From positions 248,001-312,000 of the IMG/VR virus record IMGVR_UViG_3300050120_000230: a stretch of DNA of 64,000 bases, one strand, 5' to 3'. Positions 17,343 through 54,136 of this stretch are shown here, one piece after another; position 1 is the stretch's first letter, and every line of letters begins with the position of its first letter. Both the position numbers and the translations under genes were made by a program. The notes beneath the pieces were generated by a model. The model was not told where the DNA came from. It searched no databases and worked only from the letters and a program-made list of their open reading frames with translations.

Positions 17343-17372
17343 TTGACTTCATCGTCCAGAGGGGTCTAAATA
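17343..17372 (+). promoter_or_regulatory. Hybrid promoter TTGACT-N17-CTAAATA for the release factor gene
   Basis: TTGACT 17343-17348; CTAAATA 17366-17372. Confidence 0.55.
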
Positions 17373-17440
17373 GCTGTAGCCCAAATATGGGCTAAAATCG
17401 AAAAGTCACCCATTTTAGGGCGACAACAAAGGAACGTATC

Positions 17441-18139
17441 ATGAAAAGGATTCTGGAAATCCGCTCCGCTGAAGGCGGCGCCGATTCTCAACTGTTCGTC
17501 CGCGATCTCTCGGACGCCTATCTTCGCCTGTTCGCCCGCAAGGGTTGAAAGTCCCGCGTCGTAAGGGAACGCCCATCTGACGCGGGCATAAGCGAGATCG
17601 CCTTCGAAATCGAAGGCAAGGGTCTCGAACCTCTCAAAAATGAAATCGGCGGACACCGCATTCAGCGTGTCCCTCCCACCGAAAGGCGCGGCCGTGTCCA
17701 CACGAGCACCGTGACCGTTGCTGTCATGGATGCGGATGTTACGATGCTGTCCACCTTTTCGGCGCGGGGGGCTGGCGATTTCCGAATCGAATGGTTTTCC
17801 GGTTCGGGAGCAGGAGGCCAGCACCGTAACAAACATCAGAACTCATGTCGGGTGCATCATGTTCCCAGCGGCATGTCCGAAGCCCGCCAAGGTCGCAAGC
17901 GCGAGGCAAACCTCAAAGATGCTATGGATGGTTTGACCAAGGCGCTCGACGCCGCTCAGCGAGGTGAACTCGGTGCGGTTGTCTCGACGGAACGCAAGGG
18001 TCAAGTCGGAAGTGGTATGCGAGGCGATAAGACCGTGACTATTCGTTTCCAAGACGATAAAGTCGCGCACCACATGACCGGCAAGACGATGTCCGCGACC
18101 CGCTACATGAAAGGGTTCATGGACGAGGTTTGGAGCTAA
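17441..18139 (+). CDS. prfA-like: RF1-like peptide chain release factor (lacks domain 1) with in-frame UGA at codon 36
   Basis: MKRILEIRSAEGG...FARKG*KSR...GGHRIQRVPPTERRGRVHTSTVTVAV...GAGGQHRNK; TGA at 17546-17548; the ORF track reports only 17711-18139. Confidence 0.85.
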
Positions 18140-18143
18140 GCCC

Positions 18144-18401
18144 GTGAAAGAGACGTATCGTTTCAACAACGGTGAACACACCATCGAGCCGGGCAAAACC
18201 CGCGTCTCGGCGGTGCGTGTCATATCCAATGAAGATTGGAAAACGGCGATGGCCCATGGCCAACGTAGCTTCGAAGTCGGAGAGCAAGCAACGCTCTCCG
18301 ATGCCATCGTCAATTTCTATGGCTCATACGCCAGAGTTCAATTCGATAACGTGGACTTCAGCGTCTACGTCAAATGGTCTGATCTCAACTGGGTCGGCTG
18401 A
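18144..18401 (+). CDS. Hypothetical protein
   Basis: Co-directional gene run. Confidence 0.55.
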   Translation: MKETYRFNNGEHTIEPGKTRVSAVRVISNEDWKTAMAHGQRSFEVGEQATLSDAIVNFYGSYARVQFDNVDFSVYVKWSDLNWVG

Positions 18402-18784
18402 TGACAACCATAAAGAAACTATCGAACCCCGTATTCCTCATCGAGACGACTCTCACGAACATCGTCTCACAATGGTTCCATGGCCAATATTGGAATGAGG
18501 AAACGAAACTTCGGGTGTCTTTGAATGCACCCGTGCACCCTAAAGACTACGATGGCTTCGATAAGCCCGGTTACGATTGGAAGGGTTGGACCATCGTCGG
18601 TCAGACGCCACTCAAGCCACAAGATCGCGGCTATGCCGGACCCACGAGCACCTACACAAGAGAAGGAACCGTGGGTTCTATTCGCGTCTACAACAGCGGA
18701 GAGATTATGCTCTTCATTCAAGAAGAGTATGGCTACATGTTTGACGACGCCATGGCGATCTATCGAAAGATGGAACGCTCTTAG
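18401..18784 (+). CDS. Hypothetical protein
   Basis: TGATG overlap. Confidence 0.55.
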   Translation: MTTIKKLSNPVFLIETTLTNIVSQWFHGQYWNEETKLRVSLNAPVHPKDYDGFDKPGYDWKGWTIVGQTPLKPQDRGYAGPTSTYTREGTVGSIRVYNSGEIMLFIQEEYGYMFDDAMAIYRKMERS

Positions 18785-19401: not shown

Positions 19402-19405
19402 CCGA

Positions 19406-19427: not shown

Positions 19428-20036
19428 GTGCGTATTTTTCAACTCTTCGAGGCGGCGAGTTTGCCCATGGACCCGGAATCTCGGTTCCGCCGGGCCGAAG
19501 AGCTTGGTTTCACCGTCAAAGCGTTCCATGGCACCGGAGCAGACTTCCATTCGTTCTCGCTGGCCAAAGGTAAGCCTGCGCGCGGTGGTGGCTACGCCCC
19601 GATGTTCTCGAACGTCCCCGGCGAGGCTGGCGGCTACGCCAACAAGATCAAGGGTCATGTTCTTCCCGTTCTGCTGAGAATGCAGCGGCCGATGGAAATC
19701 AGTCACCTCAAGAAACCCGGCATGGACAAGCTGCTCGCCGGTGTCCCTTCACGATGGGATGACGGCGCCAAGAGTACCCGAGACGTGATGGATTCGGTGT
19801 GGAAATACTGGTTCGACAAACTGGGTGACCAAAAGAAAGCATGGACCGAAGTGTATCGCCACTTCGCCGCGCTGGGATACGACAGTTTCGTGTTCGCCGA
19901 CATCGAGCGCGACTATCCCGATGGCGCCACGGATTCGTTGCACACGAAGTTCGTCATCTTCGATCCAAAAAATGTTCGTTCGATTTTTGCGGCATTCGAT
20001 CCCAGCAAGGCGAACTCCGCGAACCTGCTGGCTTAG
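19428..20036 (+). CDS. ART-PolyVal-like ADP-ribosyltransferase domain protein with capsid-targeting-like N-terminus
   Basis: MRIFQLFEA; AFHGT..F..F...MFS...A.GYA...VLPVLL...GYDS...IFDPKNVRSIFAAFDP. Confidence 0.65.
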   Translation: MRIFQLFEAASLPMDPESRFRRAEELGFTVKAFHGTGADFHSFSLAKGKPARGGGYAPMFSNVPGEAGGYANKIKGHVLPVLLRMQRPMEISHLKKPGMDKLLAGVPSRWDDGAKSTRDVMDSVWKYWFDKLGDQKKAWTEVYRHFAALGYDSFVFADIERDYPDGATDSLHTKFVIFDPKNVRSIFAAFDPSKANSANLLA

Positions 20037-20753: not shown

Positions 20754-20963
20754 ATGGGACAAATGCTGATCTTCCCCGAGTGGGCTTTCAAGGTGTCGAA
20801 TGCCGAGATGCTCATCATGCTCAAGGCGCTCGGTGGCCGCCTTCGAAATGACGACGAGATCGCCGAAGCGAAGGAACTGGGTGACAAGCTCACTCGCAGT
20901 CGCATCTCTGAGTTGGAGCATGTGACCACCCACCTCAAGAAGTCGATGGAGGAAAGTAGTTGA
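20754..20963 (+). CDS. Hypothetical protein
   Basis: SD AAGGAG upstream. Confidence 0.6.
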   Translation: MGQMLIFPEWAFKVSNAEMLIMLKALGGRLRNDDEIAEAKELGDKLTRSRISELEHVTTHLKKSMEESS

Positions 20964-20989
20964 CGAGAGCTAAACTCTCGGACTAAATA
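20960..20989 (+). promoter_or_regulatory. Hybrid promoter TTGACG-N17-CTAAATA with inverted repeat CGAGAG-ctaaa-CTCTCG in the spacer
   Basis: Directly visible; predicted TSS at or near ATG 20995. Confidence 0.6.
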
Positions 20990-20994
20990 GGAGG

Positions 20995-21036
20995 ATGAGA
21001 ATGACGGTCACCACGCGAACAACGACCACCGGCTGA
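20995..21036 (+). CDS. Thr-rich leader peptide MRMTVTTRTTTTG (putative attenuator uORF)
   Basis: 7 of 13 codons are Thr; stop codon inside a hairpin; 34 nt upstream of tRNA-Thr genes. Confidence 0.7.
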   Translation: MRMTVTTRTTTTG

Positions 21037-21070
21037 GCCCCTGCAAGGGTTTCAGTCGTAGAGGTTGCGC

Positions 21071-21153
21071 GCCACGGTGGCTCAGCGGCGACAGCGCGTC
21101 ATTCGTAATGACGAATACAAACACCGGGGGTTCGAGTCCCTCCCGTGGCACCA
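21071..21153 (+). tRNA. tRNA-Thr(CGT), enlarged variable loop, encoded CCA
   Basis: Acceptor GCCACGG/CCGTGGC; anticodon stem CGTCA/TGACG, loop TT-CGT-AA; T-loop TTCGAGT. Confidence 0.85.
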
Positions 21154-21171
21154 ACCTCTCATCCTCCATAT

Positions 21172-21335
21172 GCCGGTTTAGCTCAGTTGGTAGAGCAGTG
21201 GTTTTGTTTCCGTGGCGGGTAATAGCCTCGGGTCGAGCGATCTTCGGATCGCTCCCTTTGAAGGACAGAGAGCCTAAAGCTCACAAGTCCAAGGAAAACC
21301 GAAGGTCGCGGGTTCGAGTCCTGCAACCGGCACCA
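21172..21335 (+). tRNA. tRNA-Thr(TGT) interrupted by an 88-nt insert (21208-21295) directly after the anticodon
   Basis: Exons GCCGGTT...GTGGTTT-TGT and AA-ACCGA-AGGTC-GCGGG-TTCGAGT-CCTGC-AACCGGC-ACCA rebuild a canonical tRNA. Confidence 0.8.
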
Positions 21336-24821: not shown

Positions 24822-25229
24822 TCAGCCAATCCACCGGAGCTTGAAGTAGAGAGCGTCATTAGACGTGGCGAACTCAACCGTATAGCGCACCATTTCTTCT
24901 TGGGTGGCGTGATAATATTCGGCGTGGCGGCGCGGATAGGCCACGTTGCCTTTCAGATTTTCCATGCACCATTCTTTGACCGGCGCCTTCAGTTTCACGC
25001 GCCATTGTTCGCGCAAGATCGAAGTCGGGATCGGCGACGATATGTCGAGAATGTCTTCGGCTTGATCCGGTGGAACGAAGATGCGGTGCGTCTTGACTTG
25101 AACGTTTAGCGGAAAGGACACGATCTTCGATTTGTCATCGTCCAGAAACCGAATCATCGTATCACTCGGAAAGTCGCTCATGCTCAGCAGACTTTTGATC
25201 GTGATTTTTTCGACTGTCATGACCACCAT
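24822..25229 (-). CDS. DAxxFK[LM]xW-family protein (tandem array, member 8)
   Basis: DALYFKLRWIG. Confidence 0.75.
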   Translation of the reverse strand: MVVMTVEKITIKSLLSMSDFPSDTMIRFLDDDKSKIVSFPLNVQVKTHRIFVPPDQAEDILDISSPIPTSILREQWRVKLKAPVKEWCMENLKGNVAYPRRHAEYYHATQEEMVRYTVEFATSNDALYFKLRWIG

Positions 25230-25531
25230 CGCATCTTGAAGTGAATCGCTGACATCTCATCCATGAACCAGATCGCGTTGACCGGATCGTCTTGGTTGAT
25301 GATTCTCGGCATCGGAATATGTTCCATGCAATCGTATCGAAATCCGGCCGGAATGTAGTGGAAGCCCACTGCACCTTTCACGTTGTCGTCCATCCATGCG
25401 AGCACGTCATCACGAAGGCGTTGGACGGTCTTTCCGCCCTCGTGGGTTCTCACGACCAGATCGTTTGGTATCAGGCAGCGGATAGCAGTTTCTATTTCAT
25501 CTACGCTCGGCCAGCGATTCTCAACCATCAT
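25217..25531 (-). CDS. DAxxFK[LM]xW-family protein (array member 7)
   Basis: SAIHFKMRWWS. Confidence 0.75.
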   Translation of the reverse strand: MMVENRWPSVDEIETAIRCLIPNDLVVRTHEGGKTVQRLRDDVLAWMDDNVKGAVGFHYIPAGFRYDCMEHIPMPRIINQDDPVNAIWFMDEMSAIHFKMRWWS

Positions 25532-25742
25532 GCTTATCTCCCCAACGTAGCTTGAAATGGAGATAGTCTTCGTCGCATTTGAAGGTGATGATGCAGACGG
25601 TGTTGAAGAAATCCATACCCCAGTGCCACTCGTCGCGCATGTTCAGTTTCAGCCACGCGAGAACCTCTGGCGAAGGCCGCCAAGTGTCGTATTTGGTGAA
25701 TACCGAATGTTCTTGGGAAATGGTGATACAACCGCCAGACAT
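25521..25742 (-). CDS. DAxxFK[LM]xW-family protein (array member 6)
   Basis: DYLHFKLRWG; start overlaps upstream TGA. Confidence 0.7.
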   Translation of the reverse strand: MSGGCITISQEHSVFTKYDTWRPSPEVLAWLKLNMRDEWHWGMDFFNTVCIITFKCDEDYLHFKLRWGDKHDG

Positions 25743-25996
25743 CAGAACCACTTCAGCTTGAAATAAATCGCATCCTTGGTTCGCATCGTAACGGCTGGAT
25801 TTCCGACCATCATCTTTGTGCCAAGTTGACCCACCAGCATGAAAGCCTGTGGCGCCAGTTTCCAATATTTGATGCGTTCAGCCCTACACCATTCGTCCAC
25901 GTCAGAACGCAAGAAAATATCATACACGCGAAACCACGATTTGCTAAGACCTTCTATCACCAATTCTCTGGGCAATTCGAAGCGTTCGCGTTTCAT
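25742..25996 (-). CDS. DAxxFK[LM]xW-family protein (array member 5)
   Basis: MKRERFE...DAIYFKLKWF. Confidence 0.7.
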   Translation of the reverse strand: MKRERFELPRELVIEGLSKSWFRVYDIFLRSDVDEWCRAERIKYWKLAPQAFMLVGQLGTKMMVGNPAVTMRTKDAIYFKLKWF

Positions 25997-26220
25997 AGCC
26001 ATCGCATCTTGAACATCAAAGCATCGTTGTCGTTGGCAAATTCGATCTCGAACGGCAGCGCGTAGTCTTTGCGTTCGGAGGACGATTTCCACGACAGATA
26101 AAAATCCTGCACCAACTCTTCGCGGCACCAAGCATCCATTTCATCCAACAGACGAACCTCAGCCAGAACGCGAGTATCATCTCGGATGAATTGAATGGGA
26201 ACAGGGACGATCATGCCCAT
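25993..26220 (-). CDS. DAxxFK[LM]xW-family protein (array member 4)
   Basis: DALMFKMRWL. Confidence 0.75.
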   Translation of the reverse strand: MGMIVPVPIQFIRDDTRVLAEVRLLDEMDAWCREELVQDFYLSWKSSSERKDYALPFEIEFANDNDALMFKMRWL

Positions 26221-26477
26221 TATCCCTCTTCTCCCCAGAACATTTTGAACAGCACCGCATCGGTGTCTTTTGCGAAACTCGCCTCCGCAGTCACCGGCCG
26301 ATTGATGCTAAATCGCGCGGTGCAATCGTTCGGATCACCCTTGCGATGCACTCGCCATTTTCCCTTTAGATTTTTCGCGACCCAAGACAGCACGTCTTTT
26401 CGGAAACGATATCGGCCGTCGCGGATTTCGGCCACGCCGTATGGGACTGAGATGGTGGCCTTCATCTTCATAGCCAT
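26220..26477 (-). CDS. DAxxFK[LM]xW-family protein (array member 3)
   Basis: DAVLFKMFWG. Confidence 0.75.
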   Translation of the reverse strand: MAMKMKATISVPYGVAEIRDGRYRFRKDVLSWVAKNLKGKWRVHRKGDPNDCTARFSINRPVTAEASFAKDTDAVLFKMFWGEEG

Positions 26478-26788
26478 CGCATCTTGAAGGCCAACGCCGC
26501 CGCGTCCGTTCTGAATCGAAAATAAGGCTGGCGATCATCGTCTAGGAAACAGCGAATGTTTCCTCCGATCATTTCCTTCGCCCATTGTTCGATTTCTGGC
26601 GCGGGCAGCCAAATTGACGGCCGCGACCACCATCCGGCCTGCATTCCGGCCGGTCCCGCCGCCCCCCGCGTGAACCACGCCAGTGGATTATGTTCCAACC
26701 CAGCAGAGGGTTTTATCGGCAGTTCGATCATGATCGAAAAACCGAAATTAGCCCAATCACCGGCGAATTCTTCTTCAGTCATAGCCAT
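26468..26788 (-). CDS. DAxxFK[LM]xW-family protein (array member 2)
   Basis: AALAFKMRWL. Confidence 0.75.
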   Translation of the reverse strand: MAMTEEEFAGDWANFGFSIMIELPIKPSAGLEHNPLAWFTRGAAGPAGMQAGWWSRPSIWLPAPEIEQWAKEMIGGNIRCFLDDDRQPYFRFRTDAAALAFKMRWL

Positions 26789-39940: not shown

Positions 39941-41422
39941 GTGGGACGTAAGCAGCTAACGAAGACCTTCGATCATCGCACCGAAGAGTCCTCGATCTAT
40001 CAGAATTGGGAGACTAGCGGTGCGTTCGCCCCTCGCGGCGACGGTCCTGCTTATTTTCTCCCAATGCCACCGCCGAATATCACCGGCATCTTGCACATGG
40101 GGCACGCACTTTTCGCGACCCTGCAAGACATCTCGACCCGCTATCATCGCATGAAAGGGGACGCCACGTTGTGGCTGCCGGGAAGCGACCATGCGGGCCT
40201 CGCAACGCAAGACAAGCTCGATGCTCTCATGATCGAGCAAGGGCTCGACCCTAACGGTCCAGAGTTCGATGCGTTCGCGGAAACCTACAAGCTCAGCCTG
40301 CAAGGCACGATCATGAAACAGCTTCGAAGCTGTGGTGCATCGTGTGATTGGTCCCGCGAGACGTTCACGCTCGACGACCGCTACTCCAACGCCGTCCAGA
40401 CGGCTTGGAAAAAGTGCAACGACGCTGGCCTGACCTACGCCAAGGAAGGTGAACTCTTCATCAACATGGAGCCATTGGCCAAGCGTCTGCTTGACCATCT
40501 CGATGCTGGTGATCTGAAGATCATTCCGGCCGGTGGAGAAGGAACTCTGCGGAACTTCCTGACCAAGATCGAGCCATGGAACATCAGTCGTAAAATCCGC
40601 TGGGGTCACAAAATCCCCGGATGGTTCCACGACGGGCACAACATGGTCTTCGATACATGGTTCTCGTCGGCACTCTGGCCGTTCGCCACGCTTGGTTGGC
40701 CAGACGACACCGAAGACATGCAGCGATTCTACCCGGCGGCCATGATCGAAACGGCTGACGACATTCTGTTCTTCTGGTGTGCGCGGATGCTCATGATGGG
40801 CCTCCTGCTCACCGACCGTCTGCCGTTCGACACGATCTTCCTGCACGGTTTGATCCGTGACAAGCACGGAAAGAAGATGTCGAAATCGGCTGGCAACGGC
40901 ATCGACCCACTCGACATCATCGAACGTTACGGCGCCGACAGTATGCGGTTTGCCTTGGCCGAAGCTGCCACGCCCGGTCAAGACATGAGGATGTGGGACG
41001 ACAAGTTCCAAGCAGGCAAAGCTCTGCGGACGAAACTGTGGAACGCCGCTCGATATTCCTTGGCCCATTACGAACGCCTAGGAAGCCCGCAGGAGCCCTT
41101 TAAGCCCTCGAAGCACTACGACGACGTTGAGATGGAAAAGAGGCTCACAGCGGCTCACAGGGACGCTACAGAGGCATTTGAAGAGCTACGTTACCACGAG
41201 GCTGCTCATGGGATCAGAAAGTTCATCTTCGAAGACTTGTGTGGCTGGTATATCGAGGCCACGAAGAGCCGTCTATACGACGAAGATGACCAAGATGCTC
41301 TTCAAACCCTGATGTGGGCTCTGGATGGCACGTTGAAGATGCTTCATCCGATCATGCCGTTCATCACTGAGCGCATTCGTGAGGCATATTCGGGCACGCC
41401 GCTCATCACAGATGCGTGGTAG
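39941..41422 (+). CDS. valS: Minimal valyl-tRNA synthetase (no CP1 editing domain, no C-terminal coiled coil)
   Basis: PPPNITGILHMGH, GSDHAGLATQ, WNISR..RWGH.IP, VFDTWFSSALWPF, KMSKS, YG.D..RF, LHP.MPFITE. Confidence 0.95.
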   Translation: MGRKQLTKTFDHRTEESSIYQNWETSGAFAPRGDGPAYFLPMPPPNITGILHMGHALFATLQDISTRYHRMKGDATLWLPGSDHAGLATQDKLDALMIEQGLDPNGPEFDAFAETYKLSLQGTIMKQLRSCGASCDWSRETFTLDDRYSNAVQTAWKKCNDAGLTYAKEGELFINMEPLAKRLLDHLDAGDLKIIPAGGEGTLRNFLTKIEPWNISRKIRWGHKIPGWFHDGHNMVFDTWFSSALWPFATLGWPDDTEDMQRFYPAAMIETADDILFFWCARMLMMGLLLTDRLPFDTIFLHGLIRDKHGKKMSKSAGNGIDPLDIIERYGADSMRFALAEAATPGQDMRMWDDKFQAGKALRTKLWNAARYSLAHYERLGSPQEPFKPSKHYDDVEMEKRLTAAHRDATEAFEELRYHEAAHGIRKFIFEDLCGWYIEATKSRLYDEDDQDALQTLMWALDGTLKMLHPIMPFITERIREAYSGTPLITDAW

Positions 41423-42002: not shown

Positions 42003-42262
42003 AACCAGAACAACTTGAACATAGTTGCATCGGTCTCACTGACCGTTTCGAATGTCGGCTTGTAGCCTATGCCAGAATACCAACTGGCATTCATGTTCTC
42101 AATGCACCAGTCCCATGTTTCATGGGCCATGAAGTAGCCGTCGTTCTGGTTGCCCTCAACGAGATGGCGAGGCAAGTCGATCTTATATACGACAGGTTTC
42201 GTCGATTGGATCAGTTCGACCCAATTGTTCAAGCCACAGTAAGATTTACCGAGAGCAATCAT
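41999..42262 (-). CDS. DAxxFK[LM]xW-family protein
   Basis: WCIEN...DATMFKLFWF. Confidence 0.75.
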   Translation of the reverse strand: MIALGKSYCGLNNWVELIQSTKPVVYKIDLPRHLVEGNQNDGYFMAHETWDWCIENMNASWYSGIGYKPTFETVSETDATMFKLFWF

Positions 42263-42576
42263 AGCCAGAACGTCTTGAAGAGCACGGCGTCGCGCTCGTT
42301 GAATAGTTGAAAATGGATATACGTCTTGGGACGGGGCTCATAGTGACAGACGTTCACCAGTCCTTCTCTATTTTCCATGAGCCAGTCATAGGCATCTTGT
42401 GCTCGCCCACTGAACATGTTCGGCCCGAAGTCATAGGACGCGCGCTTCGGTGTGGCAGCCGTTCGAAGCTTCAGGCCAAACGTCGCCACGGTCACGTTGC
42501 AGAGTTCAATGATCTCTGGCGCGGGCTCATTAGCACCATCGCCCCATCCGAAAGGAAACACCGGCCTCACATCCAC
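42259..42576 (-). CDS. DAxxFK[LM]xW-family protein
   Basis: DAVLFKTFWL. Confidence 0.75.
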   Translation of the reverse strand: MDVRPVFPFGWGDGANEPAPEIIELCNVTVATFGLKLRTAATPKRASYDFGPNMFSGRAQDAYDWLMENREGLVNVCHYEPRPKTYIHFQLFNERDAVLFKTFWL

Positions 42577-42830
42577 ATCAACTTGAACTGCAAGGCATCG
42601 CGATAATTGGGAATGCCCAGATAGAAAACATCTGCATTTGAATTCGGGTAAAACAGGTCCGCAAAATTTGCCTTTGCCCAGTTGAATGCGGCTTCCGCCT
42701 TTGGCTCCCAGTTATAGACTGCCACCGGCGCGTCGCAACATTGAATGGCTTCTCGTTGCAACGCAAATACCCAGCCCGCCGCAACTTCGACCGGCCCAGA
42801 GATTTCCAAAATCGGGTCAGAGATTTCCAT
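42567..42830 (-). CDS. DAxxFK[LM]xW-family protein
   Basis: DALQFKLMWM. Confidence 0.75.
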   Translation of the reverse strand: MEISDPILEISGPVEVAAGWVFALQREAIQCCDAPVAVYNWEPKAEAAFNWAKANFADLFYPNSNADVFYLGIPNYRDALQFKLMWM

Positions 42831-42907
42831 TAACGAAGCCTAACACGGTCGAGAGTGGTTCGCCAAAATTTCGTTGACCATTTTACCCAGCCTGCTACCA
42901 TCTCAGG

Positions 42908-43591
42908 ATGGACAAGAAGTCGATCATCATCACGGAAGAAAGGTCGGTCACTGCGGGTTCGGAATACCTCCGCAAGACCAGAGTCAGCCGCGTCAACACT
43001 TGCTGGAAGATCGTGGACACCGAAACCGGATTGTTCTGGAACGGATACAATGCCCAGTGCAATCACGTCGTTGGTACGCGTTTCGAACGGCGTTCATCGC
43101 TCGACGATGCCGTGAAATACTGCATCTTGCATGGTGGATTTCCGAAGACGTGGGACGTGGTCGAAGTTCGTCTCAGCGAGACTGAGATGGGGCGCCTGCG
43201 TGGCGAGGACGTGGTCATCGACTACCAGATCGAGACCGAACTTCCGAAAATCCTGAAGCAACGATTCTCTTGCAACGAAACTGAGACAGGACACGGCGTG
43301 ACCCTGTTTCGGCGGATGCGTCGCAAGGGTGAGTTCGATGCGTGTCCGTTCATTGGCCTGCGCTCTGGGAAATATACCCATAGCTGGCCTACCTTCAAAT
43401 CCGCCCTGAAGGGCGTAACCGGCGATCTCACGGGTAGATTGCAAGCCGAGACCGGTGGTTGGGTTCTGTTCGCCGACAAGGAAGCTGCGACGATGGCGAG
43501 GTTGACCGACACGCTGAAGGGCGTGGGGGAAATCAAAGAACTCAAGATCGCATTCTCGCGCGCCATCGGTCTCCCGGTGGATCGAATCTGA
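42908..43591 (+). CDS. TGLFW-family protein 1
   Basis: WKIVDTETGLFW. Confidence 0.7.
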   Translation: MDKKSIIITEERSVTAGSEYLRKTRVSRVNTCWKIVDTETGLFWNGYNAQCNHVVGTRFERRSSLDDAVKYCILHGGFPKTWDVVEVRLSETEMGRLRGEDVVIDYQIETELPKILKQRFSCNETETGHGVTLFRRMRRKGEFDACPFIGLRSGKYTHSWPTFKSALKGVTGDLTGRLQAETGGWVLFADKEAATMARLTDTLKGVGEIKELKIAFSRAIGLPVDRI

Positions 43592-44292
43592 TGAAGTCTG
43601 TCGCCGTAGATTTTGAAGACGGCATGACGCCCGCGAAACCGCGCGCTTACAAGACCGTGCGGCCGGTGAACAAATCCATGTTCAAGTTGCGCGATCCCAA
43701 GACCGGTCTGTTCTGGGGCGTCTCGTCCTCCAAGACGCCGATGTTCAACAATATCGGGAAAAGTTGGAGCACGCGCAAGTCGGCTATGCGGAACTGGGCC
43801 GAATACAATTTCGAGGGTATGCTCGCCTCTGACAATCGCGCGCCGCTTGAACTCGCTGTGTTCGAAGTGACGACCGTCGAACAGAACGTCATTCCGGTCT
43901 GTGACATTTCCATGGAAAGAGTGGCCAAGGTGGAAGCGGTTCTCGGTAAGAATGCCGGGCACTATGGGATGATCGAGTTCCTGAAGAACATTGCTCGGGA
44001 AAACAAGTTCAACGCGGCCTACGTCATCGACGCAGAGGGAAACCGTGAGTTCGCCACGCCGTCTCCCGTCCCGGCCAATATCAAGTTCCGGGACAATCTA
44101 CAGCGTTCTTCCGGGCTATCTACCGATCAGTCTACCTATTTGCTTCTTGCGCTCGAATCCTTTACTGATCTCGCGTTCATGAGAATGGCAATCAGTGAGA
44201 ATATTGTTGCCATCTATGACATTGATGAGATCATCGCCCGGTATGATGGTGGCGAGCGCCATGACCGGAAGAAAAGAGGAGATGCGTTTTGA
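43591..44292 (+). CDS. TGLFW-family protein 2
   Basis: FKLRDPKTGLFW. Confidence 0.7.
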   Translation: MKSVAVDFEDGMTPAKPRAYKTVRPVNKSMFKLRDPKTGLFWGVSSSKTPMFNNIGKSWSTRKSAMRNWAEYNFEGMLASDNRAPLELAVFEVTTVEQNVIPVCDISMERVAKVEAVLGKNAGHYGMIEFLKNIARENKFNAAYVIDAEGNREFATPSPVPANIKFRDNLQRSSGLSTDQSTYLLLALESFTDLAFMRMAISENIVAIYDIDEIIARYDGGERHDRKKRGDAF

Positions 44293-44906
44293 AAAAGAAA
44301 AAAGCCCCTGACGCGTCGAATCCTAACTCGGAACCACGCCTCTTCAAGTTCATCGACGAAGCCACGAATCTGTTCTGGACCGGCAAACTCAAGGCCGGTG
44401 GCTCGGACGCGCTGTTCGGAGAGCGCGGGATGGAGTTTCGTTCGCGCACGGCCGCCGAGGAAGCATTCTGTAACTACGAGGTGACCCGGCTCGGGATGCC
44501 CGACCTGAACTTGCCCGAAGTCAAGATGCTGGTGTTCAAAGTTGAACTGATCGAACTCGACCGGCGGTCGTTCGATCTGGCGCCTTCGGCTGTTCGTCTC
44601 ACCCGCTTTGCCATGACGCATGGCAAGCAAGATCGTCTGGTCGGATTCGTTCGTGCGCTGAGTGAGCGCGGTGCGGGCGACTTCATGGACTTTCGCTACA
44701 TCGTCGCCCGCAGTCCGGCAGCCACATTCGATCTCGCCGCCTTGACGAATGCCGTGCTGTCGTCGCGCAAGAGCGGCAAGAAACTGATCGCCATTCGATC
44801 CGACGCGGACCTTCTCTATCTCCGCATGTCGCTCGGCGAGGGTTTTGTCACGGCCTACGACCTCGACACGGCCGCACAGGTGGCCAAGAAGGAAGAGCAC
44901 GCGTGA
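44289..44906 (+). CDS. TGLFW-family protein 3
   Basis: FKFIDEATNLFW. Confidence 0.7.
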   Translation: MKKKKAPDASNPNSEPRLFKFIDEATNLFWTGKLKAGGSDALFGERGMEFRSRTAAEEAFCNYEVTRLGMPDLNLPEVKMLVFKVELIELDRRSFDLAPSAVRLTRFAMTHGKQDRLVGFVRALSERGAGDFMDFRYIVARSPAATFDLAALTNAVLSSRKSGKKLIAIRSDADLLYLRMSLGEGFVTAYDLDTAAQVAKKEEHA

Positions 44907-45103
44907 CTGCACAACTGACCGTCGTCCCGTCAGCCACGAAGCCCATCAACTCGATGCGCGACTGGTTGGATCAGCAGACGACAGAAGCGTTGGTGTCGGT
45001 GCGCGAATCGGTGATCGGTGATGAACGGCGGGAGATCGATTTGGAGATCACCCGCAGAGAAATCGCCAAAGAACCCGTGCGGAAGGGGCTCAATGTATAT
45101 TGA
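44903..45103 (+). CDS. Hypothetical protein
   Basis: GTGA overlap. Confidence 0.55.
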   Translation: MTAQLTVVPSATKPINSMRDWLDQQTTEALVSVRESVIGDERREIDLEITRREIAKEPVRKGLNVY

Positions 45104-45827
45104 GTCGTTCTCGTATCGGGGTTGGCGTGGGGCTGGCTTCAAGTTCAAGTTCACCAAAGGCGTAAACGTCTTGGTGGGGATGAACGGCTGCGGCAAAACC
45201 AACTCTGCCGAACTGTTGGCGATTCTTGTGGGTCACAAAGACGCGCACAAACTGTTGCGCGAAGACGACCAACTCAAATACGCCAAGATCGTCGTCGGCG
45301 AAGACGTGGGACCGTCTGCTACGCAGCGATACGTTTTGGAACTGAAGGACGGCATCGACCTTGAGAAAATCAACGCCTTCAAGGACTGTTTACCAACACT
45401 GACCAGTTTCGTGCTTCAGCAAGACGATCTGCGGGATGATCGGTTCGTGACGGCTAGGCGCGAGCCGGTTGAATGCCAAAAAGACATGCTGGAATGGCTC
45501 CGCGCGCACGATCTCGATCTGCGGCTCTACGTCAAGGATGGTGAGTACGCGACATTGCTGGTTAGCGAGACCGGCGCGCAACGCTATCTGATGACCGTGG
45601 GGATGCGGCGGGCGCCGAGCGCAACGCCGATGATCGTCGAGCATCCCGAGCGCAGCCTCCACATCATGCTGCGGAGGCGGATTGCCGATTACTATCGCGA
45701 GAGCAACGATCAGCAAGTCATCTTGACGACGCATGACCCGGAAGTGCTTAGCATGGTAGACAGTGCTCGATGGGGCACATACCACGATTGTGCCATCGAC
45801 ATGTCGGACAAGAAAATCAGATGGTAA
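45093..45827 (+). CDS. Compact ABC/AAA_15-21-type ATPase (OLD/AbiEii-like ATPase fold)
   Basis: GVNVLVGMNGCGKTN; IVEHPERSLH; QVILTTHDP. Confidence 0.75.
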   Translation: MYIESFSYRGWRGAGFKFKFTKGVNVLVGMNGCGKTNSAELLAILVGHKDAHKLLREDDQLKYAKIVVGEDVGPSATQRYVLELKDGIDLEKINAFKDCLPTLTSFVLQQDDLRDDRFVTARREPVECQKDMLEWLRAHDLDLRLYVKDGEYATLLVSETGAQRYLMTVGMRRAPSATPMIVEHPERSLHIMLRRRIADYYRESNDQQVILTTHDPEVLSMVDSARWGTYHDCAIDMSDKKIRW

Positions 45828-46285
45828 CGGTCAAGGACTTGTCTAATCTTCTCGATACGCTGGTCGTCGATGACACGCGCTCGATCATTCTCGTTCCAAA
45901 GCAAACGCCGAATCACCTAGACTCAGCGCACTCCATCCCACCGGAATATTTGTGGATGATTCCGTTGTCGGCGGCTGGACACTACATCATCCACGACCAC
46001 GCCAAAGAACCAGAGGGCATACAAGCATTTGAGCATTGTAGGTCACCGATCATTCAATACGATTTGTATGATGACCGTAGCTTCAGCTACCAGCGCACTC
46101 GTCTCCACGACATGGGCATGACACAGTGGTGCGAAGAAACCCTTCGCGGCCACTACATCGTGCGTAAGAACTATGAGGCGGTTTTGCCGCCGCCGAGCGT
46201 CAAAACGATCATCGAAGTCTGGTTCGATGACCCAGTGGACGCCGTGGTTTTCAAGATGCGATGGAAGGGCAACCCATGCGAATAG
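45821..46285 (+). CDS. DAxxFK[LM]xW-family protein
   Basis: WCEE...DAVVFKMRWK. Confidence 0.7.
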   Translation: MVTVKDLSNLLDTLVVDDTRSIILVPKQTPNHLDSAHSIPPEYLWMIPLSAAGHYIIHDHAKEPEGIQAFEHCRSPIIQYDLYDDRSFSYQRTRLHDMGMTQWCEETLRGHYIVRKNYEAVLPPPSVKTIIEVWFDDPVDAVVFKMRWKGNPCE

Positions 46286-46578
46286 AGGATCGCCCGAACA
46301 TCGCTCTTTCGCATCTTGACCTTCAAGATGGCAGGCACGAGGACATCAGCGATCTGCCTATCGTCGTCGTGCCGTTGAAAAACGTCTGTATTTCTGGTGG
46401 CAGCCTTGCATTGGCGCCCGAGACTAGGCATTGGCTAATTGCCAACGTCGGCCACCAATATCGTGGCGAGCAGATTTCGTGCTGGGATTATATCCTCGCA
46501 GAGAGCGCCACCGGGCTCGCGACGTTTCGGTTCAAAGACGTAACGCACGCCACCTTGTTCAAAATGTTCTTCTCATGA
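46276..46578 (+). CDS. DAxxFK[LM]xW-family protein
   Basis: HATLFKMFFS. Confidence 0.7.
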   Translation: MRIEDRPNIALSHLDLQDGRHEDISDLPIVVVPLKNVCISGGSLALAPETRHWLIANVGHQYRGEQISCWDYILAESATGLATFRFKDVTHATLFKMFFS

Positions 46579-48575: not shown

Positions 48576-48807
48576 AATCTGGGCCGCCGTGACCCATGAC
48601 CGCGTCGAGGGATTGCGCGTCTTGGTGAAGTTGTTCGGCGGCAAACTGCACTTAGGATTCCACGACGTTTGGGTCACGCCTAACGGCCCGGTGTGGCGAC
48701 AGTTCTTTTCCGCTGTCGGAACAAACCTCACTACTTTCGACACTTTCGAAGAGCTTGAGACTCACGTCAAAACGACCCTCGCTGAAAAACTTGATGTCGT
48801 TGACTAA
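48556..48807 (+). CDS. ELNxLxKMF-family protein 8 (divergent)
   Basis: RVEGLRVLVKLFG. Confidence 0.6.
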   Translation: MTTEEYKIWAAVTHDRVEGLRVLVKLFGGKLHLGFHDVWVTPNGPVWRQFFSAVGTNLTTFDTFEELETHVKTTLAEKLDVVD

Positions 48808-48843
48808 ATAAATGTTGACGGGCCGATTCCGGTCCTTCATAAA
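48804..48843 (+). promoter_or_regulatory. Late motif CTAAATA (48804) plus TTGACG (48815)-N17-CATAAA promoter with a spacer hairpin
   Basis: Directly visible upstream of the leader ORF and tRNA cluster. Confidence 0.5.
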
Positions 48844-48852: not shown

Positions 48853-48984
48853 ATGACAAACGCACGCACCATTTTCGGAACCGCCAACGCGCCCCTCGGG
48901 CGCGATTGCGGCGATATGGGCGGTCGGGGCGAACGAGAACTTCGCGCCGGGATGGTTCGTCATGGTGTTCTGACCAGCTTCTAA
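48853..48984 (+). CDS. 43-aa Gly/Asp/Glu-enriched leader peptide (putative attenuator uORF)
   Basis: MTNARTIFGTANAPLGRDCGDMGGRGERELRAGMVRHGVLTSF; absent from ORF track. Confidence 0.55.
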   Translation: MTNARTIFGTANAPLGRDCGDMGGRGERELRAGMVRHGVLTSF

Positions 48985-49047: not shown

Positions 49048-49072
49048 CGATTGTCCAACTTCAAATGACAAT

Positions 49073-49148
49073 GGAGCGGTAGCTCAGTGGTAGCAGCGCC
49101 GGTTTGTCAGGCCGAAGGTCGCGGGTTCGATCCCCGTCCGCTTCGCCA
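49073..49148 (+). tRNA. tRNA-Asp(GTC), encoded CCA
   Basis: GGAGCGG/CCGCTTC; loop TT-GTC-AG. Confidence 0.9.
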
Positions 49149-49173
49149 TTTCATTTGAAGCTAGGTGATTTGA

Positions 49174-49245
49174 GCGGCTGTAGCTCAGTGGTAGAGCATC
49201 TCGTTGCCAACGAGAATGTCGCGGGTTCGAATCCCGCCAGCCGCT
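49174..49245 (+). tRNA. tRNA-Gly(GCC), no encoded CCA, flanked by a 13-bp inverted repeat
   Basis: GCGGCTG/CAGCCGC, U73; TCTCG-TTGCCAA-CGAGA. Confidence 0.9.
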
Positions 49246-49281
49246 CAAATCACCTAGAAGGCAATCCTCCGAGACCTTTAC

Positions 49282-49355
49282 GGAGCGTTCGACTATGGGT
49301 AAGTCATCACCCTTTCAAGGTGAGGTAGCGGGTTCGAGCCCCGCACGCTCTACCA
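49282..49355 (+). tRNA. tRNA-Glu(TTC), encoded CCA
   Basis: TCACC-CTTTCAA-GGTGA. Confidence 0.9.
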
Positions 49356-49357
49356 AT

Positions 49358-49431
49358 GGACCGTTCGTCTATGGGTAGGACACCACGTTCTCAGCGTGGG
49401 GGAAGGGGTTCAAGCCCCCTACGGTCTACCA
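49358..49431 (+). tRNA. tRNA-Glu(CTC), encoded CCA
   Basis: CCACG-TTCTCAG-CGTGG. Confidence 0.9.
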
Positions 49432-49468
49432 ATCTCAGCTTCGGTTGAGACGATCTTTGAAACTATAT

Positions 49469-49540
49469 GCGGGCGTAACTCAGCGGTAGAGTGTCAGCCT
49501 TCCAAGCTGTTCGTCGCAGGTTCGATCCCTGTCGCCCGCT
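49469..49540 (+). tRNA. tRNA-Gly(TCC), no encoded CCA
   Basis: GCGGGCG/CGCCCGC, U73; TCAGC-CTTCCAA-GCTGT. Confidence 0.9.
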
Positions 49541-49549
49541 CACTTTCAT

Positions 49550-49621
49550 GCAATCTTCGTCTATCGGCTAAGACGCCTTGCTTTCCGGCAGGAAAGAGCA
49601 GTTCGATTCTGCTAGGTTGCT
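49550..49621 (+). tRNA. Atypical tRNA-Gly-like gene with non-canonical (6- or 8-nt) anticodon loop
   Basis: GCAATCT/AGGTTGC plus U73; T arm AGCAG-TTCGATT-CTGCT; CTTGC-TTTCCG-GCAGG. Confidence 0.6.
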
Positions 49622-51237: not shown

Positions 51238-51662
51238 CCTCCTATCAACTGCTCAAAGAGTATAAGGGCCTAGAGCCCTTCGCTGTATTCCACCCGATCA
51301 TGTGGACGAAGACTGACGACGATCTGTGCATAGGGGATCATGAACGCCGTATTCGTGAACTGTTGATGTGGCTCAATGACCGAAACGCACCATATCAAAT
51401 CATCATCAAAGAAGAACTGAAACCCGTAGAAAATTTCGACGGATACAACGGCTATCAATCCTACCGGCATTATCACAACAATTACGAACTCGTCGTCGAA
51501 GACGATGACGCCGTAGTATTGATGAAACTTTTCTTCGAAGATTTCGTGCCATTCCCGATTACACCCGAACCTGTTGTGGTTGTTGAAACTTCCACTCCTA
51601 TTACGGAGCCACCGCCAGAAAATTTCTTCGCCTTCTGGCTGAAGAGATTGGGATTTGGTTGA
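51234..51662 (+). CDS. DAxxFK[LM]xW-family protein (divergent)
   Basis: DDAVVLMKLFF. Confidence 0.6.
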   Translation: MTSYQLLKEYKGLEPFAVFHPIMWTKTDDDLCIGDHERRIRELLMWLNDRNAPYQIIIKEELKPVENFDGYNGYQSYRHYHNNYELVVEDDDAVVLMKLFFEDFVPFPITPEPVVVVETSTPITEPPPENFFAFWLKRLGFG

Positions 51663-51712
51663 CGAAAACTGGTTCGATGATAGGTTGTGTGTAGACTTCA
51701 AAGGAGTGGCAC

Positions 51713-51961
51713 ATGGCGCGTTATCAGAACTCAGAAAATTGCGCGCTGACCGGTGTTAGCGGCGCGGAACTGATCCGCCGCTCCGGCGACTGCCAACCCA
51801 TCGGCGAAATCTACAAGGGCCAAGACGGCTGGAAATCCTACGCGGGCTACGAGCTTCCGGCCGAGTTCCGGGGAACGTGGGACCTGCGGGTCGATGCGAT
51901 CTTCGCCATCAACGAGGCCGACCGTCTGCAAAATCGGGGGACCTACTATGGCGCGATCTGA
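51713..51961 (+). CDS. Hypothetical protein
   Basis: Early promoter at 51659; SD AAGGAG. Confidence 0.7.
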   Translation: MARYQNSENCALTGVSGAELIRRSGDCQPIGEIYKGQDGWKSYAGYELPAEFRGTWDLRVDAIFAINEADRLQNRGTYYGAI

Positions 51962-52190
51962 CCTGACCCCCGACTATGTCGATTTCGGCGACCACGTTCG
52001 CAACGCCGGACTTGGTCAGTGCCAGTACGTTTCGCGCTACGTTGGCGGGCGCCATGGCTACCCGGATTTTGGCGAGGGTCTGCGCTTCCAAGGCGATCCC
52101 ATCGACTATCATTTCCTCGAAATCCACAAGGATGACGTGGACACTTTCATCGAACGCGTGAAAGAGCATCTGCATCGGCGCGGGTTCTGA
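51948..52190 (+). CDS. Hypothetical protein
   Basis: Co-directional run. Confidence 0.65.
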
Positions 52191-52198
52191 GAAACAAC

Positions 52199-54136
52199 AT
52201 GACCGAACCCTACGATCACGCGACCGTCGAGCAGAAATGGCGCCAGTTCTGGGCGAAATCACGCCTGTTCGATCAGGCGCTCGCAAGCCGGACGAAGACG
52301 AAATACTACGTGCTGGAAATGTTCCCGTATCCCTCGGGTCGCATCCACATGGGGCATGTCCGCAACTACGCCATCGGCGACGTGCTGGCGCGCTACAAGC
52401 GCAGCCAAGGCTTCAACGTGCTTCATCCCATGGGCTGGGACGGCTTCGGCCTGCCCGCTGAGAACGCGGCCATTGAAAATGGCACGCACCCTGCGGACTG
52501 GACGTTCGCCAACATCGCCGCCATGCGTGAGCAATTGAAGCGTCTGGGCTTGTCCGTGGACTGGACGCGCGAAATCGCGACTTGTGACCCGGCGTACTAC
52601 GGTGAGCAGCAAAAACTCTTCCTGCGGCTGCTGTCCGCTGGTCTCGCCTATCGCAAAGAAAGCGAAGTCAACTGGGACACCGTGGACAACACTGTGCTGG
52701 CCAACGAACAGGTCATCGACGGTAAGGGCTGGCGCTCGGGTGCACCTGTCGAGAAGCGGATGCTGACCCAGTGGTTCTTCCGAATCACCAACTACGCCGA
52801 TGAACTGCTGGACGGTTTGAAGACCCTGTCGAACTGGCCGGAGAAGGTCAAGACGATGCAGCAAAACTGGATCGGCAAGGACGAAGACGGCAACACGATG
52901 CTGCGCGACTGGGGCGTGTCTCGGCAGCGGTATTGGGGTTGCCCGATCCCGGTGATCCATTGCACCGAGTGCGGCATCGTCCCGGCCGAAACGCCGGTGA
53001 TCCTGCCAAAAGATGTGGACTTCACAATCCCCGGCAACCCGCTGGCCAACCATCCGACGTGGAAACACGTCGCGTGCCCGACGTGCGGCGAGGATGCGAC
53101 GCGTGAGACCGACACCATGGACACGTTCGTGGACTCGTCGTGGTATTTCGCCCGCTTCGTCAGCGCCGACCCCGCGAACCCGATCTGCGATGCGGGCATC
53201 GATCATTGGATGCCGGTCGATCAATATGTCGGTGGTATCGAACACGCCATCCTGCATCTGCTGTATGCCCGGTTCTTCACCAAAGCGTTGCGCGACACGG
53301 GCTGTTGGCGAGTGGACGAACCATTCACCGGGCTGTTCACGCAAGGCATGGTCACGCACAAGACCTATCGAACCGTGATCGGCAAGGAATGGGTCTACCC
53401 GGAAGAAGTGACCCTCAACAGCGACGGCGTCACGGCCAAGATGACCGCCACCGGACTTCACGTCGAAATCGGCGCGGCCGAGAAGATGTCGAAGAGCAAG
53501 AAAAACGTCGTCAGTCCTGACGCGATCTTCGACAAGTATGGCGTCGATGCCGCCCGCCTGTTCGTGCTGTCAGACAGCCCGCCGGAGCGCGATTTCGTGT
53601 GGTCCGAAGCTGGTGTCAAAGGCGCCGCAGGATTCATCCAGAAAGTCTGGAACGTCATCAACGAACCCGATGGCGTGCCGGACCAAACCAACATCATCCT
53701 GACCCACCAGACGATCAAGGACGTGACCGATTGTCTGGACAACTTCAAGTTCAACAAAGCGGTCAGTCTCCTGCATGTTTTCGTAGCCGGGATCACCGGT
53801 AAGGCCGACGTGGCGACCAAGAAAATTCTGATCCAACTGATCTCGCCGATGACGCCACATCTGGCCGAAGAGGCATGGCACGATCTCAAGGGTTGCTACT
53901 CCATCGTGGATGAACCGTGGCCGACGTTCAATCCCGCTCTGTTGGTGCCGCCGAACGTCACCATGCCGGTGTCGGTGAACGGCAAGCGCCGCAGCGAGAT
54001 CGTTGTCCCGCTGGATCACGCCGACGACTTGGTCATCGCCATTGCGACGGCTGATCCCGAAGTCATGCGCTTCATCGGCGATGGTGTGAAGAAAGCCATC
54101 GTCGTCAAGAACCGCATCGTAAATCTGGTGGTGTGA
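52199..54136 (+). CDS. leuS: Leucyl-tRNA synthetase lacking the CP1 editing domain
   Basis: [89 protein letters not shown]. Confidence 0.97.

What the first reader, a model, noticed from the sequence alone, without database searches (positions are those of the whole stretch)
17343..54136. Candidate system: a self-sensing translation back-up, with each phage component gated by the step it supplies
Seen: (a) a Thr-rich leader ORF immediately before two tRNA-Thr genes; (b) a Gly/Asp/Glu-rich leader ORF before the Asp/Gly/Glu tRNA cluster; (c) an RF1-type release factor that needs UGA readthrough. All three loci have a TTGAC box plus a late-type CTAAATA motif and nearby hairpins. Established: amino-acid attenuators use cognate-codon leaders; RF2 is autoregulated by stop-codon bypass; several anti-phage systems cleave tRNAs or otherwise block translation. 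Inference: the phage may monitor depletion of particular charged tRNAs or of termination activity and switch on replacements only on demand, for example as a counter-defence. Minimal ArgRS/ValRS/LeuRS, Pth2 and a ppGpp-hydrolase-like gene fit the same theme. I do not know of this layout being described for phage tRNA operons, but cannot check the literature.
Basis: partly seen in the sequence, partly recalled or inferred. Interest (0 to 1): 0.92.

Follow-up and report, generated by a model that had tools for sequence, protein, structure and literature searches.

The report
Phage release factor gated by UGA
In an uncultured giant phage, a shortened release-factor gene can be made in full only by reading through a conserved internal UGA stop codon, and a tiny threonine-codon ORF sits before its threonine tRNA genes, but the three loci are not shown to form one self-sensing system.

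Summary
The window is part of a 415-kb uncultured jumbo phage distantly related to Atu_ph07 and Phosso.

(c) Confirmed and strong. An RF1-type release factor gene without domain 1 (17441-18139) has an in-frame TGA (17546-17548) where homologues have Trp. The TGA is present in every one of 13 related lineages I checked (40-82% identity); one carries it at a different codon. TGA is otherwise the phage's main true stop, so this is gene-specific read-through, not code 4. A covarying stem follows the TGA.

(a) Real but unproven. A 13-codon ORF with 7 Thr codons starts 5 nt after a promoter-like CTAAATA, 34 nt before tRNA-Thr(CGU). Its core recurs in two other phages. No terminator follows it, and six tRNA-Thr loci in other relatives (20 tRNA units in all) lack such an ORF.

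(b) Not supported. The Asp/Gly/Glu "leader" is not enriched against real-protein composition, has no coding signal and no relatives.

The shared TTGAC/CTAAATA motifs are generic: 17 CTAAATA copies in the window. The sensor codon (UGA, read by RF2) does not match the RF1-type activity supplied.

Verdict: no unified system. One apparently undescribed recoding site, one intriguing mini-ORF, and an 88-nt mobile-looking insertion in tRNA-Thr(UGU).

The parts
17343..17372 (+). TTGAC-N18-CTAAATA promoter-like site upstream of the RF gene. A 68-nt leader with a small hairpin follows.
   Evidence: One of three such bipartite sites in the window.
17441..17545 (+). RF gene, first 35 codons (start of PCRF domain 2).
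   Evidence: Pfam PCRF positions 103-134, E = 6e-6. Best NCBIfam match is prfA.
17546..17548 (+). In-frame TGA recoding site in the context GGT-TGA-AAG, aligned with the Trp of the RF1 'GW' motif.
   Evidence: TGA is found in 13 related lineages. One homologue (L031) has TGG.
17549..18139 (+). RF gene, remaining 196 codons plus the TAA stop. Holds the rest of PCRF, the P-P-T (PxT) motif, GGQ and the RF-1 domain.
   Evidence: RF1 structures match at 1e-26, RF2 at 3e-12.
17553..17586 (+). Stem-loop starting 5 nt after the TGA: 8-bp stem 17553-17560 with 17579-17586.
   Evidence: Fold z = -2.96. Across 11 homologues 72.7% of cells pair against 64.3% in shuffles (0 of 500), with compensatory G-C to A-U changes at two pairs.
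20960..20989 (+). TTGAC-N18-CTAAATA promoter-like site of the tRNA-Thr unit.
   Evidence: The relative L012 has the same layout.
20995..21036 (+). 13-codon Thr-rich mini-ORF. Its ATG lies 5 nt after CTAAATA, so it is probably leaderless. Conserved core at 21013-21024.
   Evidence: Homologous ORFs occur in L012 and L010/L028.
21030..21058 (+). Hairpin that encloses the mini-ORF stop codon. No U-tract follows it.
   Evidence: The equivalent hairpin in L012 shows one compensatory change. It is not terminator-like.
21071..21153 (+). tRNA-Thr(CGU) with a 12-nt variable region.
21172..21335 (+). tRNA-Thr(UGU) interrupted by an 88-nt insertion (21208-21295) after U36.
48804..48819 (+). CTAAATA followed by TTGAC, upstream of the Asp/Gly/Glu tRNA cluster.
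48853..48984 (+). Most likely not a functional leader.
49073..49621 (+). tRNA cluster: Asp(GUC), Gly(GCC), Glu(UUC), Glu(CUC), Gly(UCC), plus an odd tRNA-like gene with a 6-nt anticodon loop.

Best explanation
The span is not one system. It holds three separate transcription units in the translation-gene neighbourhood of a jumbo phage. Each starts at the phage's commonest promoter-like motif, CTAAATA. That motif usually sits 4-6 nt before a start codon, which implies leaderless or near-leaderless mRNAs.

(1) Release factor. This is an RF1-derived factor without domain 1. It keeps the RF1 reading-head residues and GGQ. Its codon 36 is a conserved UGA where homologues encode Trp.
- Shown: the frame is continuous across the stop. 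The UGA is conserved over wide divergence, and a covarying stem lies 5 nt downstream. The base after UGA is always A or C. UGA is a true stop elsewhere in the phage.
- Inferred: the full-length factor is made only when a near-cognate tRNA, most likely tRNA-Trp, beats RF2 at this UGA. Output would then rise as RF2 termination capacity falls. An RF1-type factor could relieve RF2 indirectly by taking over UAA stops.

(2) Thr mini-ORF. This is a conserved, probably translated 5'-terminal ORF with four consecutive Thr codons just upstream of a hairpin and tRNA-Thr(CGU).
- Inferred, weakly: a ribosome slowed at these codons would keep the hairpin and the leader/pre-tRNA pairings open. That could change processing or read-through of the tRNA-Thr precursor. 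It is not a classical terminator-based attenuator.

(3) The Asp/Gly/Glu 'leader' is most likely a chance ORF.
For: Identity of the phage.

Generic motif.

Release factor:
- Domain continuity. The prfA model scores 5e-39, prfB 2e-16 and prfH 3e-9. The alignment to E. coli RF1 shows the Q-R-V-P-x-T...H-T and GGQ residues kept.
- In-frame TGA in L005-L010, L029/L030, L033-L035 and L040-L042.
- L010 has its TGA about 11 codons further along, an independent position.
- L031 has TGG at the site.
- Of the best 120 short homologues, 105 are called only from downstream of the site. Three of the four 'full-length' calls I checked turned out to contain TGA.
- TGA ends 59 of 103 gene calls in the window. 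No other coding-TGA-coding junction that is not a plain gene boundary exists there.
- Stem statistics and compensatory pairs.
- The base after TGA is A in 11 lineages and C in 2. The terminal stop is TAA in 11 of 13.
- A 2016 review states that no RF gene with an in-frame stop read through in the same frame was known in bacteria (PMC5009743).

Thr ORF:
-.
- The conserved core sits at codons 7-10 in all three phages.
- In L010 the ORF also holds Pro and Trp codons and precedes tRNA-Pro, tRNA-Thr and tRNA-Trp.
- The hairpin shows a compensatory change.
Against: - There are no expression data, and the phage is uncultured.
- The amino acid inserted at UGA is unknown. Only one homologue with a sense codon (TGG) was verified at the DNA level.
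- The downstream stem is absent or different in several lineages (L009, L010, L029, L033, L034).
- The sensing logic is inference. A conserved leaky stop could simply set a low constitutive level.
- The three Thr ORFs share one ancestry, so they count as one evolutionary observation.
- The conserved core is identical at synonymous sites. That fits an RNA- or DNA-level role as well as a coding one.
- No terminator follows the ORF.
- Six related tRNA-Thr loci do without it: L016, L026, L031, L041 and L044, plus the stand-alone Thr of L011.
Confidence: 0.6

Rival explanations
1. All three loci belong to one self-sensing back-up. Each is switched on by depletion of the very activity it supplies, possibly as a counter-defence against tRNA- or translation-targeting host systems.
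For: The Thr ORF with cognate codons before tRNA-Thr is real and conserved. The RF gene needs stop-codon bypass. The RF gene and a tRNA-Thr unit are neighbours in several relatives.
Against: The shared motifs are generic. The Asp/Gly/Glu leader is not significant. There are no terminators. 20 other tRNA units in RF-bearing relatives have no cognate-rich leader, six of them tRNA-Thr loci. UGA is an RF2 codon while the factor is RF1-type. No defence or anti-defence link was found.
Confidence: 0.08
2. The Thr mini-ORF is a by-product. The ATG belongs to the promoter and initiation region that this phage uses everywhere. The C/A-rich, G-poor stretch is kept for an RNA- or DNA-level reason, such as an unstructured segment, part of a processing stem, or a binding site. 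It merely reads as Thr in one of three frames.
For: The core is identical at synonymous positions in the window and L012. It sits at a fixed distance from the promoter in all three phages. The 5' end pairs with the spacer after tRNA-Thr(CGU) in both folds, like a processing stem. Three other tRNAs here have complementary flanks. Relatives drive tRNA-Thr from the same promoter type without any such ORF.
Against: The ORF keeps its start, frame and stop in three phages whose RF proteins are only 40-82% identical. The ACG to ACA change in L010 is synonymous. The L010 ORF gains Pro and Trp codons where tRNA-Pro and tRNA-Trp join the operon. The ATG context matches that of real genes.
Confidence: 0.4
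3. The RF UGA does not sense anything. It only holds expression of a potentially harmful domain-1-less factor at a low fixed level. Alternatively it delays expression until a phage-encoded UGA-reading tRNA, encoded elsewhere in the 415-kb genome, appears.
For: The leaky-type context is conserved. TGA-recoded phages are known to pair RF1 with a suppressor tRNA and TrpRS (bioRxiv 10.1101/2021.08.26.457843). In L010 a tRNA-Trp lies 1.3 kb downstream of the RF gene.
Against: No suppressor tRNA and no other recoded gene lies in the 64-kb window. The L010 tRNA-Trp has a normal CCA anticodon and a 5-bp anticodon stem (read). Low expression could be reached more simply. UGA arose at two independent positions in the family, which suggests that a link to termination is itself selected.
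Confidence: 0.3
4. The RF gene is a pseudogene or an assembly error, or the phage uses genetic code 4.
For: Gene callers split the gene, or call it in code 4 on short contigs.
Against: The same TGA occurs in 13 independent assemblies with both halves under purifying selection. TGA ends 57% of the gene calls in the window, including overlapping ATGA junctions. There are no other in-frame TGAs.
Confidence: 0.02

Closest known systems
RF2 (prfB) autoregulatory recoding
   Same: An early in-frame UGA in a class I release factor gene. The yield of full-length factor depends on how well that UGA is terminated.
   Different: prfB uses a +1 frameshift, and the stop is cognate to the factor it encodes. 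Here the frame is unchanged (read-through) and the factor is RF1-type, so the stop is read by another factor. PMC5009743 says no bacterial RF gene with same-frame read-through was known.
Giant-virus release factor gene needing read-through and frameshifting (cited in PMC5009743)
   Same: A virus-encoded release factor whose synthesis requires stop-codon read-through.
   Different: That is a eukaryote-type factor in an amoeba virus. This is a bacterial RF1-type factor lacking domain 1, in phages.
Leaky UGA of RNA phage Q-beta (A1 protein), read by tRNA-Trp (from memory)
   Same: UGA followed by A, decoded at low frequency by a near-cognate tRNA to give a longer product.
   Different: Q-beta makes a C-terminal extension of a functional coat protein. 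Here the pre-stop product is a 35-residue fragment that is unlikely to be functional.
Code-change module of TGA-recoded Jade phages: RF1, suppressor tRNA and TrpRS
   Same: A phage-encoded RF1 associated with UGA decoded as Trp.
   Different: In those phages the module is written in standard code and many late genes carry TGA. Here only the RF gene carries it, and TGA is the main stop.
Leader-peptide transcription attenuators (thrL, trpL, hisL)
   Same: A short ORF with a run of codons cognate to the regulated pathway, lying directly upstream.
   Different: No intrinsic terminator or alternative terminator/antiterminator pairing. The downstream genes are tRNAs, not biosynthetic or synthetase genes. 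The ORF is probably leaderless.
PrfH and ArfB (short GGQ factors)
   Same: Small RF-like proteins lacking domain 1.
   Different: The phage protein keeps the RF1 codon-reading motifs and scores far below the PrfH cut-off (36.7 against 166.65 bits). No RtcB partner was seen nearby.

Membership tests
Peptide chain release factor 1 (prfA) | PCRF and RF-1 domains with PxT and GGQ motifs | tested here: met
   P-P-T and GGQ are present. RF1 structures match at E = 1e-26, RF2 at 3e-12.
Peptide chain release factor 1 (prfA) | Full length with N-terminal domain 1, and a score above the NCBIfam equivalog cut-off | tested here: not met
   The match starts at model position 107 of 347. The score is 134 bits against a cut-off of 400.
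RF2-type autoregulatory recoding | In-frame UGA early in the gene | tested here: met
   Codon 36.
RF2-type autoregulatory recoding | +1 frameshift at the stop | tested here: not met
   The domains continue in the same frame.
RF2-type autoregulatory recoding | The stop codon is read by the factor the gene encodes | tested here: not met
   The reading head is RF1-type by sequence. Actual specificity has not been assayed.
Programmed stop-codon read-through | Stop conserved among diverged homologues, with both flanks coding | tested here: met
   13 lineages.
Programmed stop-codon read-through | Conserved context or downstream structure | tested here: inconclusive
   The base after TGA is A or C in 13 of 13 lineages. 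The stem is supported in one sub-lineage but is not universal.
Programmed stop-codon read-through | Full-length product made in vivo | not testable with these tools
   Needs a reporter assay or proteomics.
Stop-codon-reassigned (code 4) phage | Many genes with in-frame TGA, and TGA not used as a stop | tested here: not met
Leader-peptide transcription attenuator | Short ORF with a run of cognate codons | tested here: met
   Met for the Thr ORF. Not met for the Asp/Gly/Glu ORF.
Leader-peptide transcription attenuator | Intrinsic terminator between the leader and the regulated genes, with a competing antiterminator | tested here: not met
   No terminator-like site. The hairpin lacks a U-tract.
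Leader-peptide transcription attenuator | Leader conserved wherever the regulated genes occur in relatives | tested here: not met
   Present in 3 related phages. Absent at six other tRNA-Thr loci and 14 further tRNA units.
PrfH | Score above the family cut-off and an RtcB partner | tested here: not met
   36.7 bits against 166.65. Neighbouring genes gave no RtcB hit.

The most novel reading that the evidence does not exclude
Two separate translation-status sensors exist in this phage lineage.

(i) A family of phage RF1-type factors, with thousands of metagenomic members, is synthesised only by read-through of a conserved UGA. The phage would thereby read out the host's RF2 termination capacity and respond with extra release activity. 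This would be the first same-frame read-through control of a bacterial-type release factor.

(ii) A leaderless Thr-codon mini-ORF couples ribosome speed on Thr codons to the maturation or read-through of phage tRNA-Thr precursors. This would be the first leader-peptide control of a tRNA operon.
Probability: 0.15. Interest if true: 0.88.

Novelty: new variant of a known kind. Interest (0 to 1): 0.62.

Why it matters
Recoding in release factor genes is the textbook case of translational autoregulation, but it is known only as the RF2 frameshift.

A large, conserved family of phage RF1-type genes that need UGA read-through would add a second, cross-wired design. It would also show that phages tune termination, not only tRNA supply.

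There is a practical consequence for annotation. These genes are split or truncated in almost all automated gene calls: 105 of the best 120 homologues.

The Thr mini-ORF, if functional, would extend leader-peptide sensing from biosynthetic operons to tRNA genes.

The 88-nt insertion in tRNA-Thr is far shorter than any known bacterial tRNA intron, and it comes and goes between close relatives. It could be a new kind of small intron.

Tried and rejected
- **Code 4 for the phage.** Rejected: TGA ends 59 of 103 gene calls, and no other coding-TGA-coding junction exists.
- **Pseudogene or assembly error.** Rejected by conservation.
- **Internal re-initiation after the TGA.** In the window there is no in-frame start between the TGA and the PxT motif (read directly).
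- **Odd tRNA at 49550-49621 as a UGA suppressor.** Rejected: its loop reads UUUCCG, with no UCA.
- **Classical attenuator.** No terminator found.
- **More relatives of the Thr locus.** Neighbour-protein scans of viral and metagenome contigs found only one other contig. Two DNA-pattern scans did no better. A protein search on the upstream gene gave two contigs with a different gene order.
- **Relatives of the Asp cluster.** None found.
- **Known RNA family for the insertion or the leader.** None in Rfam. No GenBank phage matches the insertion.
- **ArgRS.** Not found in any ORF I scanned.
- **Literature.** Seven searches found no description of the RF read-through, of a tRNA-operon leader peptide, or of the insertion. 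Subscription-only papers are not covered.


Full report
**Source and setting.** The window is bases 248001-312000 of IMGVR_UViG_3300050120_000230, a 415,409-bp viral contig. Its tail-sheath-stabiliser homologue is about 40% identical to those of Sinorhizobium phage Phosso and Agrobacterium phage Atu_ph07. GC content is about 55%. It is therefore an uncultured jumbo myovirus, probably of an alphaproteobacterium.

**The shared motifs are generic.** CTAAATA occurs 17 times in the window against 1.4 expected.
- In 11 of the 17 cases an ATG or GTG that opens a real-looking gene follows 4-6 nt later.
- In four others a normal leader of 27-68 nt follows.
- Three sites have TTGAC 18 nt upstream: the RF gene, the Thr unit, and a gene at 15684 on the minus strand.
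- From memory, CTAAAT resembles the alphaproteobacterial sigma-70 -10 box. I read the motif as a promoter that often yields leaderless mRNAs.

Sharing this motif says only that each locus starts a transcription unit.

**Release factor: what the gene is.** The gene runs from 17441 to 18139 with TGA at 17546-17548.
- The Pfam PCRF model continues across the stop, covering positions 103-134 before it and 138-194 after it. An RF-1 domain follows.
- The protein is closest to RF1: prfA 5e-39, prfB 2e-16, prfH 3e-9. RF1 structures match at 1e-26 and RF2 at 3e-12.
- It keeps Q-R-V-P-P-T...H-T and GGQ, aligned to the E. coli RF1 reading head.
- It lacks domain 1.

**Release factor: the in-frame stop is conserved.**
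- Relatives at 82, 71, 54 and 50% identity have TGA at the same codon. A 40% relative has TGA about 11 codons further on.
- Seven more lineages taken from a protein search also have it.
- Of the best 120 short homologues, out of 4,856 hits, 105 are called only from downstream of the site. Three of the four 'full-length' entries I checked proved to be code-4 calls that contain TGA.
- One AT-rich relative has TGG, so the site encodes Trp.
- Only three weak hits fell in 185,579 representative bacterial and archaeal genomes, all of them MAG contigs. The family is essentially a phage family.

**Release factor: not a code change.** TGA ends 59 of 103 gene calls in the window. No other coding-TGA-coding junction exists there apart from plain gene boundaries.

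**Release factor: signals around the stop.**
- The usual context is GGY-TGA-AAG. The next base is A in 11 lineages and C in 2, never U or G. From memory, those are the weak termination contexts in E. coli.
- The gene's own terminal stop is TAA in 11 of 13.
- An 8-bp stem starts 5 nt after the TGA, with fold z = -2.96.
- Between the window and L007 the stem codons are invariant, while five of the six loop codons carry synonymous changes.
- Over 11 homologues 72.7% of cells pair, against 64.3 +/- 2.1% in shuffles (0 of 500). G-C to A-U compensations occur at two pairs.
- Other lineages have different hairpins or none.

**Release factor: mechanism.** I infer read-through by a near-cognate tRNA, most likely tRNA-Trp, in competition with RF2. 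Because the factor is RF1-type, this is not self-sensing. A plausible logic is that poor UGA termination raises the supply of a factor that takes over UAA stops and so frees RF2. A fixed low expression level, or timing by a suppressor tRNA encoded elsewhere, cannot be excluded.

A 2016 review states that no bacterial RF gene with same-frame read-through was known, and cites a giant-virus case as the nearest parallel. Papers on huge phages and on recoded phages report phage release factors but not this feature.

**Thr unit: what is there.** After TTGAC-N18-CTAAATA the ATG at 20995 opens a 13-codon ORF with 7 Thr codons, four of them consecutive.
- Only 1 of 280 comparable small ORFs in the window is as rich in any such residue.
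- The 59-kb relative contig has the same promoter, spacing, ORF length and R-T-T-T-T end before tRNA-Thr(CGU) and tRNA-Thr(UGU).
- A distant relative (L010/L028) has a 17-codon ORF with the same core at the same codon positions. It holds 4 Thr, 2 Pro and 1 Trp and ends 10 nt before tRNA-Pro, tRNA-Thr and tRNA-Trp.

**Thr unit: what argues against a regulator.**
- The three ORFs are homologous, so they form one evolutionary observation.
- The core is identical at synonymous sites in the two closer phages.
- No terminator-like site follows. The hairpin that encloses the stop codon has no U-tract, although it keeps a compensatory change.
- The 5' end of the transcript pairs with the spacer after the first tRNA in both phages, like a processing stem.
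- Six other tRNA-Thr loci in related or RF-bearing phages have no such ORF. One of them uses the same TTGAC-N18-CTAAATA promoter. So do 14 further tRNA units in relatives.

I rate a real ribosome-mediated role at about 0.3. If real, it would act on precursor folding, processing or read-through rather than by classical attenuation.

**Asp/Gly/Glu unit.** The first ORF after CTAAATA is 14 codons long with one cognate codon. The 43-codon ORF has 12 of 42 cognate codons, against 20.8% in the phage's own proteins. It has no runs, a coding score near zero, no terminator after it, and no relatives to compare. It is not supported.

- ValRS (493 aa) and LeuRS (645 aa) are real and short. The model coordinates indicate loss of the editing domain.
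- A Pth2 domain and an HD_4 (ppGpp-hydrolase-type) domain exist at 10230-11252 and 13551-14228.
- No ArgRS was found.

This is a translation-gene neighbourhood. That is already known for huge phages.

**Verdict.** The conserved UGA read-through site in a large family of phage RF1-type genes is the solid result, and I found no description of it. The Thr mini-ORF is an open lead, and the tRNA-Thr insertion deserves its own follow-up.

Noticed in passing
window 21172-21335 (insertion 21208-21295); L016 5308-5473 (minus strand); L043 1-160: tRNA-Thr(UGU) carries an 88-nt structured insertion right after the anticodon. Homologous insertions sit at the same site in two other jumbo-phage contigs. Close relatives of two carriers (L012 and L044) have the uninterrupted tRNA, so it looks like a mobile intron. 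A conserved 3' module and a variable hairpin show covarying pairs. It is far too short for a group I intron. It has no Rfam hit and no GenBank phage match.
   Followed up: partly
window, 17 sites, for example 503, 1654, 13548, 15689, 19406, 19416, 61646: CTAAATA is 12-fold over-represented. It usually lies exactly 4 nt before the ATG of real genes, which suggests that many mRNAs of this phage are leaderless.
   Followed up: partly
window 21049-21175, 49051-49170, 49152-49268: tRNA-Thr(CGU), tRNA-Asp and tRNA-Gly(GCC) are flanked by 8-13-nt complementary sequences that lengthen the acceptor stem. They could be processing stems. Shuffles reach the observed length in 23, 4 and 0 of 500 trials.
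   Followed up: partly
window 49550-49621: A tRNA-like gene with good acceptor, D and T arms but a 6-nt anticodon loop (UUUCCG) and a bulged anticodon stem. ARAGORN cannot name it and Rfam misses it.
   Followed up: no
window 24822-26788 and 42259-46578, several small genes: A family of small paralogous proteins of about 100 residues, each ending in a motif like F-K-(L/M)-R-W.
   Followed up: no
window 39941-41422 and 52199-54136: ValRS and LeuRS are much shorter than the cellular enzymes. The model coordinates skip the CP1 editing domain, so these enzymes may not proofread.
   Followed up: no
window 514-1650, 19428-20036; L033: Genes with the ART-PolyVal (ADP-ribosyltransferase) domain lie next to the RF gene here and in a distant relative.
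   Followed up: no
L029/L030 (GCA_023667605.1, a 1.97-Mb contig) and L033 (a 1.14-Mb contig): The split RF gene, with phage-like neighbours, also lies on megabase-sized contigs of NCBI assemblies. These could be integrated elements, very large phages or chimeric assemblies.
   Followed up: no
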